A stretch of 64,000 nucleotides of DNA from Salpingoeca rosetta (GCA_033442325.1 JAWQFM010000014.1:328589-392588), one strand, 5' to 3'. Shown: positions 15,107-19,068, counted from the stretch's first letter. Made by a program: numbers and translations. Notes: generated by a model from the sequence alone, not told the origin.

Positions 15107-16620
15107 ATGGCTGGTGGAGGCAAGAAGGCACCGCTGCCGGAGTGCCGGTTTGGCTTGTCGTGCTATCGCAAGAACGTCAAGCACTTTGACGAGTACTCAC
15201 ACCCGTGCAAGTACGGCGCAGCGTGCTATCGCCGCGATCCCGACCATTTCCACAAGTACACGCACCCCAAGGCATCCAAAACCACAACAGCAGTCGCCGT
15301 TGCCGCTGCGAAAGCCATCGCCGACGATGACGATGACGCGCGCGTGAGCGACGGTAGCGACTCCGATGGGGACGCGCGCCGACGAGGCAAGACAACAGCC
15401 AAGCGCAAGGCCGGTGGTGTCAGTGATGAGGACGACGACGACGATGACAGCGACGATCGTGGTGATGCACCAGCTGCACGTCGCAAGCCCAAGATAGCGA
15501 AAGCCGCTCGCAAGGCTGCCAGCGACAGTGGCAGCAGCGACAGTGACAGCGATGGCAGTGGGTCGAAGACTTCAGCAGCCACAGCATCATCGATCCGAGA
15601 TCTCAAAGTCGTGTTCACGGTGCGTTGTGATTGTGCGTGTTTGTGTGTGTGTGTGTATGTGTGTGTGTGTGTGTTTGTGTTTGTATGTGTGTGCGTGTGT
15701 TTGTGCGTGTTTGGGTGTGTGTGCTTGCCCAATACATGCACACATGGTCCACACACTGTGGTTTGCTGCACACACTCACGGTGTGGTTCATGCACACACA
15801 ACCACACGAGCAGGGTACATTTGAGTCTGGGATTCGGCGCGTTGTGGAGAACGAAGCGTCCAAGCTGGGTGCGATTGTGGGCTCCAGCGTGTCGTCCAAG
15901 ACGGACCTGCTGGTCATTGGCGGCCTCGTGCGTCCCTTTGGAGCCAAGGAGGATCGCGCATCAGACCTTGGTGCGACGTACATGTGACTACGCGTGTGTG
16001 TGTGTGTGTGAGCGTGCATGTGTTTGTGTGTTTGTGTGAATGTGTGCTGTGTGAGTGTGCATTTGCATGCAAAGAGGGTTACTGACACGCCGCAGCGAGC
16101 TATATGAGAAACCAATCAACACGATGGAGCAATCTCACGGTGCATCCGGCGTGCGGTTTTGCTTGGGCAGGTGTGCGCGTGATCTTTGAGAAGGAGTGGA
16201 ACGACATGGTGTTTGCAGAGTATCGTCGACGCCGAACAGCAAAAGGAGCAACGTCGACGAAGAAGGCGCACAAGAAGGAAAAGAAAGCAACTCCCCACCG
16301 CGACGCAGATGATGATGATGATGATGAAGATGATGATGAGGACGACAATGTGGACGGCAATGAGGATGAGGATGAGGATGATGATGATGGTAATGGTGAC
16401 GACGATGACGCTGATGCTGATGCTGATACACCCAAACCACTGCACAAGCTGGAGGATGGTGAGAGCGTGGACTACACGTCACCCTCGGGCTCCTCCTACA
16501 AGTGGGTAGAATGCCATTGGCAGTGACCTGCTGTCTTGTGTGCGCTGTTGTGCTTTGGATGCTGGGAAAAAAAGGGTGTCATCTTGCTGATGCCGCATTT
16601 GGTCACACACACACACACCA

Positions 16621-16660
<40 letters not shown>

Positions 16661-16824
16661 TTCTGCTGCGGTTGGCGTTGAGAAGGATCAAGCGTACCGG
16701 CGATCACTACTACTGCACGTGCCCTGCGTGGCGGAACCAGAGCGCCCCGGTCAACGCGCGCACATGCAAGCACCTCTGCGCCTACCTCGGCGACGGTGCG
16801 TACGCGTGTCGTGTGTGTGTGTGT

Positions 16825-16903
<79 letters not shown>

Positions 16904-17122
16904 CGACAGGTGTCTGCTTGTTGTGTGTCCTTGTCTTGAATTCCACCCCACCGCTTGTGCCGTGACTGATGTCCATGCTTGTTTGGCGTAAGTGCTCATA
17001 CACATCCACACACATGTGTGCACATGCAGCGTTTGAGAAAGCGCGTGTTGGCGGCGTGAAGACGGTGCCTTTGAAGGCACGCGGAACACCGAAGCCAGAC
17101 CTGCTCCTGGCCCAGCGTTGGG

Positions 17123-17158
<36 letters not shown>

Positions 17159-19068
17159 TGCAAGTTTCTTGCCAATGAGTGATGTGTGCGCCAGAATTGC
17201 CATTGCTTGTCTCCCGTTGTCGTCACATCAACCGTCACACCACCACGCGTCACACGCCACACGTCACATACCATTGTGTACGCGCTGCCCGCAGGCGCGT
17301 GTTGATCCGACTGACTGGCACATGAGCGAGAAGCTGGATGGCGTTCGCGCGTATTGGAACGGAAAAGAGCTCCTGTCCCGCCTTGGCAACGCGTTTGCAG
17401 CCCCTTCCTGGTTTACAGGCACTCTCCCGGTGTGTTTGTTTGTGTTTTGTTTGTTGTGTGTTTGCTTGTGTTTGTTTTTGTGCGTGCTTGTTGTTGTGTG
17501 TGGTTGGTTTTGTGTGCGTGTGTTTGTTTGTATGCGTGTGCGTTCGTGTTTGCTTGCTTGCTTGTTTGTTGCAAGACACTGCGCTGACTCACTTTCCAAC
17601 CATACGCCCTACACACGACCACACACACACACACACACAAACACACAAACACACACAAACACACACACACACACATGCACACACCCTGCGCGTGCCCAGC
17701 GGGACATGACACTTGACGGGGAGCTGTTCATGGGCCGCGGGCGCTTCAACGACACCGTCAGCGTCGTGCGAACCGTCGGCAGCAAGCGGTGGACAGATGT
17801 CACATACCAGGTCTGCAAGGGCAGTGGAATCGAAGGCATGGGCTGCCTTGCTTTTGCTCATTCAGGGACTGCACACACACACACACGCACACGCACACGC
17901 ACACGCACACGTACACACAATTCATTGGCGCCCCATGTAACTTTCCCTCCCTTTATGTTGCACAGGTGTTTGATTGTCCCAGTGAGGGCGCACGTGTGTT
18001 TGAGGAGCGAGTGGAGGCTTTGCAGCGCTGGCATTCTGCGCAGCCGTCCGGCCATGTGAAGCATGTCTCCCTCGTCCAGCACACAAGGTGTGTGTGTGTG
18101 CGTGTGTGTGTGTGTGTGCTGACGTGTGTGCGTGTGTGTGTGTGTGTGTGCGCGTGTGTGTGTGCATGAGCACCTGTGAGAACCTGTGCAGCTGACGCTG
18201 TGTGATGATGACATGCCCGATTTGTGCCTCCATGTGTGCGTATGTGTTTAGGGTGCGGGATGTGAAGCACATGGAGGATGAGCTGGAGCGTGTTGTGGCG
18301 CGTCTTGGGGGCGAGGGCCTGATGCTCCGACAGCCAAAGTCGACCTACGCAAAGACACGATCGTCCACACTGCTCAAGGTCCGTTTGACGTGTTTTGTTT
18401 CCTGACATGATGTTGAACTGTGTTGGCTGGTGGGTCTATCACGCTCCTTACTTCTTTGACGATGCAATTGTGCACAAGCGCAGATTCAAGTGTGAACACG
18501 TTCACACACACACGCACACGCGCGCGCGCATGGCAGGTGAAGCGCTTCTACGATGCGGAGGCGCGCGTTCTTGCTCATGTGCCCGGCAAAGGCAGACACA
18601 AGGGCGCAATGGGCGCGTTGGAGGTGGAAATGGAGTGTGGAAAGAAGGTCAGCGGCATGTGTGTGTGTGTGTTGGCGTGTGCAAACTATTCATGTTGGCA
18701 TGCGCGCGCGGTCTCTCTCTATCACCCCCGCACACTCACACACACACACACACACATTCACTCACTCACACACTCACACACACTCACTCACTCACTCACA
18801 CACACGCTCACGCACTCACACACACAAACACACACACACACACATACACACACGCATACACACACACACTCTCACTCACTCGCAGTTCAAGATTGGCACG
18901 GGGTTCTCGGACGCACAGCGCAGATCCCCGCCAAAGGTTGGCGCCATCATCACATACAAGTTCCAGGAACTGACCCCAGATGGGATTCCCCGCTTTGCGG
19001 CCTTTGTTGGCGAGCGTGCAGACGCTGCTGGACCAAAGGACTACATCCCAAAGCGCACGTCAGCATGA
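15107..19068 (+). CDS. ATP-dependent DNA ligase (minimal bacterial/viral-type adenylation + OB domains) with N-terminal 2x PBZ zinc fingers, BRCT and SWIM zinc finger; ~11 exons
   Basis: PBZ: CRFGLSCYRKNVKHFDEYSH and CKYGAACYRRDPDHFHKYTH. BRCT: VVFT|GTFESGIRRVVENEASKLGAIVGSSVSSKTDLLVIG...VRVIFEKEW. SWIM: YCTCPAWRNQ...TCKH. Ligase motifs I SEKLDGVR, III LDGELF, IIIa VFD, IV GEGLMLR, V LLK|VKRFYDAE; OB domain FKIGTGFSDAQR...GIPRF. Confidence 0.92.

What the first reader, a model, noticed from the sequence alone, without database searches (positions are those of the whole stretch)
15107..19068. PAR-reading DNA ligase: PBZ-PBZ-BRCT fused to a bacterial-type SWIM-finger minimal ATP-dependent ligase
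Seen: after splicing, one protein carries tandem APLF-type PBZ fingers, acidic/basic linkers, a BRCT domain, a SWIM finger (LEDGESV...YCTCPAWRNQ...TCKH...EKARVG) and a compact adenylation+OB ligase. It has all catalytic motifs but lacks the DNA-binding domain of LIG1/3/4. Established: PBZ binds poly(ADP-ribose), and minimal KxDG ligases of this type are typical of bacteria and viruses. From memory, SWIM-ligase fusions occur in myxobacteria/planctomycetes and some fungi. Inference: a ligase outside the LIG1/3/4 set that recruits itself to PARylated breaks, collapsing APLF/XRCC1/LIG3 roles into one polypeptide. It has ~10 spliceosomal introns, so it is not contamination.
Basis: partly seen in the sequence, partly recalled or inferred. 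Interest (0 to 1): 0.85.

Follow-up and report, generated by a model that had tools for sequence, protein, structure and literature searches.

The report
PBZ-BRCT-SWIM Lig E-type DNA ligase
This is a real, expressed 11-exon gene of the choanoflagellate Salpingoeca rosetta. It joins two poly(ADP-ribose)-binding zinc fingers, a BRCT domain and a SWIM zinc module to a small bacterial-type (Lig E) DNA ligase, but this protein and its family are already in the literature, so it is a sound rather than a new finding.

Summary
Window 15107-19068 (+) holds 11 exons with GT..AG introns that encode 664 aa. The product is identical to the public protein 'DNA ligase [Salpingoeca rosetta]', and stranded RNA-seq and transcript contigs support the splicing.

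Domains:
- Tandem PBZ fingers, with the APLF PAR-contact Tyr/Arg residues kept.
- One BRCT of the NAD-ligase LigA / RFC1 type.
- An acidic tract.
- A SWIM-type CxCx14CxH module.
- A Lig E-type adenylation + OB core with no LIG1/3/4 DNA-binding domain. Its best solved relatives are bacterial Lig E, at E about 1e-60.

The protein lies outside LIG1/3/4 and is probably drawn to PAR. It does not replace XRCC1-LIG3. The genome keeps a full LIG3 with two zf-PARP fingers, its own PBZ and a LIG3-BRCT, and probably XRCC1. It also has LIG1-like and LIG4-like loci and many PARPs.

It is not new. Hecox-Lea & Mark Welch 2018 drew the domain model of this S. rosetta protein as 'Ligase K' with N-terminal PBZ. 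Nicolas et al. 2023 characterised eukaryotic 'Ligase E' with PBZ. The SWIM + core unit is 48-55% identical to leaderless Lig E of Myxococcota and Planctomycetota. PBZ-BRCT versions occur in other choanoflagellates, Amoebozoa and molluscs.

PAR binding and ligation by this protein remain untested.

The parts
15107..19068 (+). Whole coding region: 11 exons, 664 aa. mRNA runs from about 15056 to about 19158.
   Evidence: Gene model, identical to P0002. Transcript contigs start at 15056 and end at 19157/19158.
15107..15619 (+). Exon 1 (aa 1-171): both PBZ fingers, the basic/acidic Ser-rich linker and the start of the BRCT
   Evidence: Contig X5 record 4 joins it to exon 2.
15137..15211 (+). PBZ finger 1 (C13-x5-C19-x6-H26-x5-H32; F15, Y20, R21)
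   Evidence: PF10283 at 49.6 bits in the six-frame genome search. Aligns to APLF PBZ, PDB 2kqb.
15203..15271 (+). PBZ finger 2 (C34-x5-C40-x6-H47-x5-H53; Y36, Y41, R42), directly abutting finger 1
   Evidence: PF10283 at 40.5 bits. Two stretches.
15587..16208 (+). BRCT domain (aa about 161-236), spread over the end of exon 1, exon 2 and the start of exon 3. T171-G172, R179 and K216 sit at the phosphate-pocket positions.
   Evidence: Pfam BRCT 16.9 bits, E 0.0077. Orthologue profile A5 hits the LigA BRCT at E 1e-23 and the RFC1 BRCT at 2e-16. G172, R179 and K216 are invariant in A3/A5.
15814..15970 (+). Exon 2
   Evidence: spliced reads give the joint 15969/70 -> 16170/71.
16171..16501 (+). Exon 3: end of the BRCT, basic patch, Asp/Glu tract (16302-16427), start of the SWIM module
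   Evidence: 29 + 21 spliced reads give the joint 16501 -> 16686.
16461..17052 (+). SWIM-type zinc module (aa about 321-378; C344, C346, C361, H363), spread over exons 3, 4 and 5
   Evidence: The four ligands are invariant in 54 relatives. PF04434 is the commonest, though sub-threshold, Pfam match: 21 of 53 relatives, best E 9e-4. AF2 pLDDT is 87-95 within the full model and 81.5 alone. The nearest non-family Atlas clusters carry PF04434. UniProt names relatives 'SWIM-type domain-containing protein'.
16686..16795 (+). Exon 4
17030..17124 (+). Exon 5
   Evidence: Loose ends at 17293 carry the end of exon 5, and contig X4 record 2 is colinear.
17101..18542 (+). Adenylation (nucleotidyltransferase) domain, aa about 395-569, over exons 5-10. 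Motifs I (K415-L-D-G), III (D453-G-E-L), IV (E546-G-L-M-L-R) and V (L565-L-K-V-K569).
   Evidence: PF01068 at 32-35 bits. These residues are invariant or >=90% conserved in 42 relatives. PDB Lig E matches at E 1e-59 to 1e-61.
17331..17333 (+). Codon of K415, the predicted AMP-accepting lysine (motif I)
   Evidence: Aligned to the KxDG of Neisseria gonorrhoeae Lig E.
17295..17429 (+). Exon 6
   Evidence: joint 17428/29 -> 17699/700.
17700..17810 (+). Exon 7
   Evidence: joint 17807-10 -> 17963-66.
17966..18087 (+). Exon 8
   Evidence: the loose end at 18250 carries the end of exon 8.
18252..18378 (+). Exon 9
   Evidence: contig positions 840 -> 841 are colinear with exon 10.
18537..18647 (+). 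Exon 10
   Evidence: Exon 10 matches PF14743 positions 1-22 and exon 11 matches positions 23-66, so the two exons abut in the profile.
18582..19017 (+). Lig E-type OB domain (aa 583-648), over exons 10 and 11
   Evidence: PF14743 at 102.8 bits. It is the only PF14743 locus in the genome.
18886..19068 (+). Exon 11 and the TGA stop

Best explanation
The gene encodes the single Lig E-type (also called 'Ligase K/E') ATP-dependent DNA ligase of Salpingoeca rosetta. It is an accessory nuclear repair ligase that exists alongside LIG1, LIG3 and LIG4.

Shown here:
- The exon chain and its expression.
- A complete catalytic core (motifs I, III, IV, V and the OB domain) that models with high confidence onto the DNA-bound Lig E structure.
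- A SWIM-type zinc module fixed about 70 residues upstream of the catalytic lysine. It is inherited as one unit with the core from the leaderless Lig E clade that is also present in Myxococcota and Planctomycetota.
- Two eukaryote-type additions at the N-terminus: tandem PBZ fingers and a LigA/RFC1-type BRCT.

Inferred mechanism:
1. PARPs activated at strand breaks make poly(ADP-ribose).
2. The tandem PBZ fingers bind it. Y/F15, Y20, R21 and Y36, Y41, R42 correspond to the APLF residues that contact adenine and phosphate.
3. This concentrates the ligase at the break.
4. The BRCT keeps the Thr-Gly / Arg / Lys pocket that binds 5'-phosphate DNA ends in RFC1 and PAR in XRCC1. It gives a second hold on the 5'-phosphorylated end or on PAR.
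5. The SWIM-plus-core module then seals the nick through K415-AMP.

The long acidic and basic linkers probably act as flexible tethers and carry nuclear localisation signals.
For: - Gene model and identity to the annotated protein.
- Transcript support.
- PBZ: 70.6 bits, two stretches. E 2e-11 to the APLF tandem PBZ structures, with the Cys/His ligands and Tyr/Arg contacts aligned. The role of those residues is stated in PMC6264785.
- Ligase core: PDB sequence matches are 8u6x (N. gonorrhoeae Lig E) at 7.9e-61, 4d05 at 2.4e-59 and 6gdr at 1.3e-58, against Chlorella virus ligase at about 1e-15. No LIG1/3/4 chain reaches E<0.01.
- AF2 model: pLDDT 93.1, pTM 0.83. It superposes on 6gdr (Lig E with DNA) at TM 0.89 and rmsd 2.1 A. 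Solved Lig E chains cover only model residues 72-333, so SWIM plus linker is an add-on.
- No PF04675 DNA-binding domain in the protein, whereas three other ligase loci in the genome have one.
- BRCT: the family profile hits the LigA BRCT at 1e-23 and the RFC1 BRCT at 2e-16. The pocket's function in RFC1 and XRCC1 is described in PMC6334254.
- SWIM.
- Same architecture in Salpingoeca infusionum, Choanoeca flexa, Mastigamoeba, Mastigella, Pelomyxa, Luapelamoeba and the chiton Liolophura.
- The three choanoflagellate proteins group together in the core tree (98 SH-aLRT).
- Family precedent: rotifer AvLigE-B (Lig E core + PBZ) is a functional ligase, is induced by radiation, and raises the radiotolerance of human cells (PMC10665377).
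Against: - No biochemical data exist for this protein. PAR binding, zinc binding, DNA-end binding by the BRCT and ligation are all inferred.
- PBZ finger 1 has Phe where APLF has Tyr381. This is a conservative change, and the equivalent change in finger 2 is seen in some metazoan APLFs (PMC6264785).
- The two fingers abut (21 residues between their first cysteines), unlike the wider spacing in APLF, so cooperative PAR binding may differ.
- The BRCT scores below Pfam's cut-off in this protein alone (16.9 vs 21.3 bits). It also has a 3-residue insertion and lacks the usual G-S-K-L motif.
- SWIM never reaches Pfam's cut-off, and the SWIM model has no solved structural match (Z <= 2.5).
- A complete LIG3 with its own PBZ, and a probable XRCC1, are present. 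The cell does not depend on this enzyme for PAR-guided nick sealing, and its particular niche is unknown.
Confidence: 0.78

Rival explanations
1. The ligase works mainly in double-strand-break end joining or replication-linked joining. On this reading the PBZ/BRCT modules serve chromatin, histone or protein docking rather than PAR-guided single-strand-break repair.
For: APLF, the PBZ archetype, acts in NHEJ (PMC6264785). Relatives of this ligase are fused to Pol X (pol beta/lambda-like) domains, FHA and UBA modules. A long Asp/Glu tract recalls acidic histone-binding regions. Rotifer AvLigE is induced by ionising radiation, which makes DSBs.
Against: Solved Lig E enzymes are minimal nick-sealing scaffolds, and the model matches the nick-bound form best. 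No Ku-binding or XRCC4-binding element was detected. The genome has a separate LIG4-like locus.
Confidence: 0.15
2. It is an organellar (mitochondrial) ligase, like the kinetoplastid Ligase K enzymes that share the PF01068 + PF14743 core.
For: The family was first named Ligase K after the kinetoplast enzymes, and the cores are related (PMC6264785; PMC10665377).
Against: The N-terminus begins directly with a PBZ finger, with no presequence-like stretch. PBZ and BRCT are nuclear damage-response modules. Basic NLS-like patches are present. Kinetoplastid Ligase K is more divergent from rotifer AvLigE than other Ligase E members are (PMC10665377).
Confidence: 0.03
3. It is a recent bacterial transfer, a contaminant, or a decaying gene without function.
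For: SWIM + core is 48-55% identical to myxobacterial and planctomycete proteins. The root of the family tree is unresolved.
Against: There are ten spliceosomal introns with the host's typical GT-rich/CA-rich composition. Strand-specific expression is seen in several studies. The frame is intact and every catalytic motif is conserved. Orthologues with the same PBZ-BRCT-SWIM-core order exist in two other choanoflagellate genera and group together. The gene sits on a 1.67 Mb contig.
Confidence: 0.02

Closest known systems
Eukaryotic 'Ligase E' / 'Ligase K' with PBZ fingers (Adineta vaga AvLigE-A/B, Mortierella MvLigE; Hecox-Lea & Mark Welch 2018, PMC6264785; Nicolas et al. 2023, PMC10665377)
   Same: The same PF01068 + PF14743 core, fused to APLF-type PBZ fingers. 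The 2018 paper lists 'Salpingoeca rosetta XP_004993722.1' among the domain models in its Fig. 5b. [quoted passage not shown]
   Different: The rotifer and Mortierella proteins carry PBZ at the C-terminus, among Pro-Ser-Thr repeats. Neither paper's text mentions a BRCT or SWIM in these ligases (0 mentions of SWIM in both; BRCT only for Pol lambda). Function was tested only for the rotifer enzyme.
Bacterial Lig E (Neisseria gonorrhoeae 8u6x, Psychromonas 4d05, Alteromonas 6gdr)
   Same: Closest solved structures: 39-44% identity, E about 1e-60, TM 0.89 to the DNA-bound form. Same two-domain minimal scaffold and motifs.
   Different: Canonical Lig E has a signal peptide and is periplasmic (PMC8455567; abstracts). 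It has no SWIM, PBZ or BRCT. The window protein belongs with the leaderless clade.
Leaderless SWIM-Lig E(-WGR) of Myxococcota and Planctomycetota (e.g. Myxococcus xanthus, Cystobacter fuscus, Blastopirellula marina)
   Same: SWIM module plus core are colinear and 48-55% identical over about 335 residues. All 24 sampled loci carry the CxC..CxH signature. Pedersen/Williamson's network paper noted that leaderless Myxococcales sequences cluster with fungal ones.
   Different: The bacterial proteins often end in a WGR domain instead of starting with PBZ and BRCT. They have no introns.
Human XRCC1-LIG3 and APLF
   Same: Functional analogy only: PAR-guided delivery of a ligase to strand breaks. The PBZ fingers are homologous to those of APLF.
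   Different: The catalytic core is not LIG3-like: no zf-PARP, no DBD and a different OB family. The BRCT is closest to LigA/RFC1, not to the LIG3 or XRCC1 BRCTs. S. rosetta has its own LIG3 and a probable XRCC1.

Membership tests
Lig E / Ligase K-E family of ATP-dependent DNA ligases | Adenylation domain PF01068 followed by the specific OB domain PF14743 | tested here: met
   32.2 and 102.8 bits, both above the cut-offs.
Lig E / Ligase K-E family of ATP-dependent DNA ligases | No LIG1/3/4-type N-terminal DNA-binding domain (PF04675) | tested here: met
   No PF04675 match even at E<=10. Solved Lig E chains cover the whole core.
Lig E / Ligase K-E family of ATP-dependent DNA ligases | Closer to Lig E than to viral, LIG1/3/4 or LigB/C/D ligases | tested here: met
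   E about 1e-60 for Lig E, against 1e-15 for Chlorella virus ligase and none for LIG1/3/4. Structural ranking agrees.
Canonical periplasmic bacterial Lig E | N-terminal signal (leader) peptide | tested here: not met
   The N-terminus is a PBZ finger. The protein belongs with the leaderless clade.
Catalytically competent nucleotidyltransferase ligase | Motifs I (KxDG), III, IV and V plus conserved OB residues | tested here: met
   K415, D417, G418, D453-L456, E546-G547, K567 and K569 fall in columns that are invariant or >=90% conserved in 42 relatives.
Catalytically competent nucleotidyltransferase ligase | Self-adenylation and nick sealing | not testable with these tools
   Needs an enzyme assay.
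PBZ (APLF-type CCHH) zinc finger | C-x5-C-x6-H-x5-H spacing with the CxY/F and CYR PAR-contact residues | tested here: met
   Both fingers fit the spacing. Pfam gives 70.6 bits with 2 stretches. Alignment to APLF 2kqb.
PBZ (APLF-type CCHH) zinc finger | Binds poly(ADP-ribose) | not testable with these tools
   Needs a binding assay.
BRCT domain, LigA/RFC1/PARP-type | BRCT fold signature, with sequence nearest the NAD-ligase and RFC1 BRCTs | tested here: met
   The single sequence is sub-threshold (16.9 bits; best PDB hits LigA/RFC1 at E 0.006-0.04). The profile of 10 orthologues gives LigA 1e-23 and RFC1 2e-16.
SWIM zinc finger (PF04434 / PROSITE SWIM-type) | CxCxnCxH signature in a beta-strands-then-helix module | tested here: met
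   The signature is invariant in 54 relatives. The model shows three strands followed by helices, with pLDDT 81-95.
SWIM zinc finger (PF04434 / PROSITE SWIM-type) | Significant match to the Pfam SWIM model | tested here: inconclusive
   No member reaches the 19.6-bit cut-off. 21 of 53 match at E<=1, best 9e-4. Atlas structural neighbours outside the family carry PF04434 at TM 0.52-0.55. No PDB match.
DNA ligase III | zf-PARP finger, PF04675 DBD, PF04679 OB, LIG3-type BRCT | tested here: not met
   None of these is in the window protein. All of them are in a different gene on contig C2.

The most novel reading that the evidence does not exclude
The SWIM-plus-Lig E unit may be a distinct intracellular ligase class, shared by Myxococcota, Planctomycetota and many eukaryotes. 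In this class the zinc SWIM module would be an integral third domain needed to engage DNA, taking the place of the DBD or latch of other ligases. Different lineages would then have repeatedly bolted break-signal modules onto it: WGR in bacteria, and PBZ, a LigA/RFC1-type BRCT, FHA, UBA or Pol X in eukaryotes. In choanoflagellates this would yield a self-sufficient, PAR-guided, single-polypeptide nick-repair enzyme working in parallel with XRCC1-LIG3.
Probability: 0.35. Interest if true: 0.5.

Novelty: already known. Interest (0 to 1): 0.3.

Why it matters
This is a fifth kind of eukaryotic DNA ligase that appears to plug directly into PARP signalling. The published work on it comes from rotifers and one fungus. 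S. rosetta is a genetically tractable close relative of animals. It keeps both this enzyme and a PBZ-bearing LIG3, so it would be a good system for asking what a PAR-reading minimal ligase adds to canonical XRCC1-LIG3 repair. It could also show what the conserved SWIM module does for a ligase that lacks a DNA-binding domain. The family's compact core is of interest as a molecular-biology reagent too. Because the protein and its PBZ fusion are already published, the value here is confirmation plus a few incremental details: the BRCT subtype, SWIM conservation from bacteria to eukaryotes, and co-existence with LIG3/XRCC1.

Tried and rejected
- Pfam on single exons gave only partial or no ligase, BRCT and SWIM hits because the domains are split by introns. 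This was solved by recovering the full-length public protein through an exhaustive search with exon 11.
- SWIM region against solved structures gave nothing, either by sequence profile or by structure (best Z 2.5).
- The Atlas search by language-model features gave no usable hit.
- Rooting the ligase tree failed. Only one canonical leader-bearing Lig E (P0089) was available and its branch is very long. The root fell next to the choanoflagellates, which I treat as unreliable. I make no claim about donor or direction of transfer.
- A CK2/FHA-docking motif of the XRCC1/XRCC4 type in the Ser/Asp linker: no phospho-Thr-type S-T-D-E motif is visible in the sequence, so I dropped the idea (my own reading).
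- An APLF-like histone-chaperone role for the acidic tract: there is no supporting evidence, so it stays speculation.
- Contamination or pseudogene: rejected.
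Full report
**1. The observation**

The region 14800-19400 reads as a eukaryotic gene with short introns rich in GT and CA repeats. From three-frame translations I assembled 11 exons with canonical GT..AG borders: 15107-15619, 15814-15970, 16171-16501, 16686-16795, 17030-17124, 17295-17429, 17700-17810, 17966-18087, 18252-18378, 18537-18647 and 18886-19068. 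Together they give 1995 nt and 664 aa.

An exhaustive HMMER search with exon 11 alone returned a 664-aa public protein, P0002, that is 100% identical over the exon. Its full sequence equals my model. NCBI and UniProt call it 'DNA ligase [Salpingoeca rosetta]'. The window is contig C14:328589-392588 of a 55.4 Mb assembly.

**2. Transcript evidence**

- Two stranded raw-read RNA-seq runs cover every exon on one strand at roughly 5-30x. Depth falls to about 0 in the introns.
- Spliced reads define introns 2, 3, 6 and 7 at the predicted bases. Intron 3 uses the acceptor that gives '...SSYK|IKRTG...'.
- One transcript contig is colinear with exons 1-2-3, starting at 15056, which is 51 nt upstream of the ATG. 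Another is colinear with exon 3 (its last 142 nt or so) through exon 11 and the 3'UTR to 19158.
- Loose read ends carry the sequences across introns 5, 8 and 10.
The only unbridged stretch is the low-complexity acidic repeat inside exon 3, which reads do cover.

**3. Domains**

*PBZ.* Pfam on the full protein gives PF10283 at 70.6 bits with two stretches. The first 60 residues hit the solved tandem PBZ of human APLF at E 2e-11. Both fingers have C-x5-C-x6-H-x5-H spacing. They carry F15/Y20/R21 and Y36/Y41/R42 at the positions of APLF Y381/Y386/R387 and Y423/Y428/R429. Hecox-Lea & Mark Welch describe those residues as the adenine and phosphate contacts (PMC6264785). The two fingers abut directly.

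*BRCT.* The domain is weak in the single sequence (16.9 bits, E 0.0077). A direct PDB search already ranks the LigA and RFC1 BRCTs first. A profile of ten orthologues (A5) hits the E. coli LigA BRCT at 1e-23, Thermus LigA at about 1e-21 to 1e-22 and RFC1 at 2e-16. These are far ahead of TopBP1/Rad4-type BRCTs. G172, R179 and K216 are invariant across the orthologues. They sit where the phosphate pocket lies that mediates DNA-end binding in RFC1 and PAR binding in XRCC1 (PMC6334254).

*SWIM.* C344-x-C346-x14-C361-x-H363 is invariant in 54 aligned relatives, within a conserved block of about 60 residues.
- Pfam's SWIM model is the most frequent match for these segments but never reaches significance: 21 of 53 at E<=1, best 9e-4.
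- UniProt labels many relatives 'SWIM-type domain-containing protein'.
- AlphaFold2 models the module confidently as three strands followed by helices.
- In the ESM Atlas its nearest neighbours are the same module in oomycete, mollusc and planctomycete ligases and in small stand-alone planctomycete proteins. After those come phage and archaeal clusters that carry PF04434, at TM 0.52-0.55.
- No solved structure resembles it.

*Ligase core.*
- PF01068 scores 32.2 bits and PF14743 scores 102.8 bits.
- The PDB relatives by sequence are Lig E of N. gonorrhoeae, Psychromonas and Alteromonas (E 1e-59 to 1e-61, 39-44% identity). Chlorella virus ligase comes next at 1e-15, and no LIG1/3/4 chain appears.
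- The model of aa 319-664 has pLDDT 93.1 and pTM 0.83. It superposes on DNA-bound Lig E (6gdr) at TM 0.89 and 2.1 A.
- Solved Lig E chains align only to model residues 72-333. SWIM plus linker is therefore an addition that no solved Lig E structure has.
- All nucleotidyltransferase motifs fall in invariant or near-invariant columns.
- The protein has no PF04675 DNA-binding domain.

**4. The rest of the genome**

PF01068 finds four other ligase loci. Three of them have the PF04675 DBD.

The locus on contig C2 carries two zf-PARP fingers, the DBD, the catalytic domain and a PF04679 OB. It then carries a PBZ finger (43.6 bits) and a LIG3-type BRCT (65.5 bits). This is a full LIG3 orthologue with its own PBZ.

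On C22, two consecutive exons match XRCC1_N at profile positions 44-84 and 100-138, in that order. A BRCT exon lies downstream on the same strand. XRCC1 is therefore probably present.

PARP catalytic domains are numerous. The six-frame PBZ search found only the two ligase genes, but that count is a lower bound.

So the Lig E-type enzyme adds to the canonical PAR-guided ligation machinery and does not replace it.

**5. Relatives**

A search with aa 320-664 finds thousands of relatives. They include many Agaricomycetes and chytrids, the latter often with PBZ.

Proteins with the same PBZ-BRCT-SWIM-core order come from:
- Salpingoeca infusionum, with 69% identity and three BRCTs;
- Choanoeca flexa, with 63% identity;
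- Mastigamoeba, Mastigella and Pelomyxa;
- Luapelamoeba, which has an added FHA;
- the chiton Liolophura.

Among 42 long relatives, 18 carry PBZ, 5 carry BRCT, 5 carry Pol X domains, 4 carry WGR and 3 carry UBA.

In bacteria, at least 574 loci encode relatives of SWIM + core. The 80 best of these, from Myxococcota, Planctomycetota and a few other groups, are 47-55% identical over about 335 residues. All 24 that I sampled carry the SWIM signature.

A quick maximum-likelihood tree of the core groups the three choanoflagellates (98), the fungi, the molluscs and nearly all the bacteria. The root is unreliable, so I draw no conclusion about the direction of transfer.

**6. What is already known**

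- Hecox-Lea & Mark Welch (2018, PMC6264785) describe 'Ligase K' across bacteria, fungi, protists and some animals. They state that it generally carries PBZ fingers N-terminal to the core. Their Fig. 5b draws domain models that include 'Salpingoeca rosetta XP_004993722.1'. The genome has a single PF14743 locus, so I infer that accession is this gene.
- Nicolas et al. (2023, PMC10665377) rename the group Ligase E. They note PBZ at the C-terminus in rotifers, Thecamonas and Mortierella, and at the N-terminus in three animals. They show that rotifer AvLigE-B is an active, radiation-induced ligase that improves the radiotolerance of human cells.
- Pedersen/Williamson's network analysis noted the leaderless Myxococcales Lig E cluster that groups with fungal sequences (PMC8455567).
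- In the text of these papers I found no mention of the SWIM module in any of them, and no mention of a BRCT in these ligases. A full-text search for S. rosetta + DNA ligase + PBZ returned only the 2018 paper and one unrelated preprint.

**7. Mechanism**

Shown: gene structure, expression, domain content, an intact catalytic core, and family placement.

Inferred:
- PARP-made PAR is read by the tandem PBZ fingers.
- The LigA/RFC1-type BRCT pocket holds a 5'-phosphate end or PAR.
- The SWIM-plus-core module encircles and seals the nick through K415-AMP.

I put identity and family placement at about 0.95, and the PAR-guided nick-sealing mechanism at about 0.65.

**8. Verdict**

The feature belongs to a published family, and this very protein has been drawn in a published figure.
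- full RNA support for the model;
- the BRCT subtype;
- conservation of the SWIM module as a unit with the core from bacteria to eukaryotes;
- co-existence with a PBZ-bearing LIG3 and a probable XRCC1.

Noticed in passing
G000 contig C2:415111-421850 (loci L002, L003, L008, L013), outside the window: The LIG3 orthologue of S. rosetta has two zf-PARP fingers, the DBD and the catalytic core. Between its OB domain and its LIG3-type BRCT it also has a PBZ finger. The only two PBZ-bearing loci that the six-frame search found in this genome are both DNA ligases.
   Followed up: partly
window 15620-18885 (the ten introns of this gene): Seven of the ten introns are GT/TG-rich in their 5' half, and most are CA/AC-rich in their 3' half. 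Introns 1 and 6 fold far more stably than mononucleotide shuffles (z about -10 and -9), with the two halves pairing.
   Followed up: partly
proteins P0005, P0007, P0020 (metagenomic; not in the window): These are fusions of a Pol X (pol beta/lambda-type: HhH, fingers, palm, thumb) polymerase with a Lig E core, in either order. At least two carry the SWIM signature. They are candidate single-polypeptide gap-fill-and-seal enzymes.
   Followed up: no
loci L015-L094 and proteins P0240-P0262 (bacterial): Myxococcota and Planctomycetota encode leaderless SWIM-Lig E proteins that often end in a WGR domain, the break-sensing module of PARP1-3. Small stand-alone proteins of 93-175 aa with the same SWIM-like fold occur in Planctomycetota.
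   Followed up: partly
proteins P0003 (2912 aa) and P0116 (3007 aa): These are giant proteins with many repeated matches to the C-terminal part of the Lig E OB domain (22 and 5 stretches). Their nature is unknown.
   Followed up: no
window about 19073-19500 (+): A downstream same-strand gene starts within about 100-200 nt of the ligase stop codon. Reads show a splice donor at 19329, joining to sequence that encodes ...[10 protein letters not shown]... The 3'UTR of the ligase and the 5' end of this neighbour are very close or overlap.
   Followed up: no
G000 contig C9:1677333-1677842 (loci L006, L010): This is a fifth PF01068-matching locus with no detected PF04675 DBD. I did not identify it; it could be another ligase or a related nucleotidyltransferase.
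   Followed up: no
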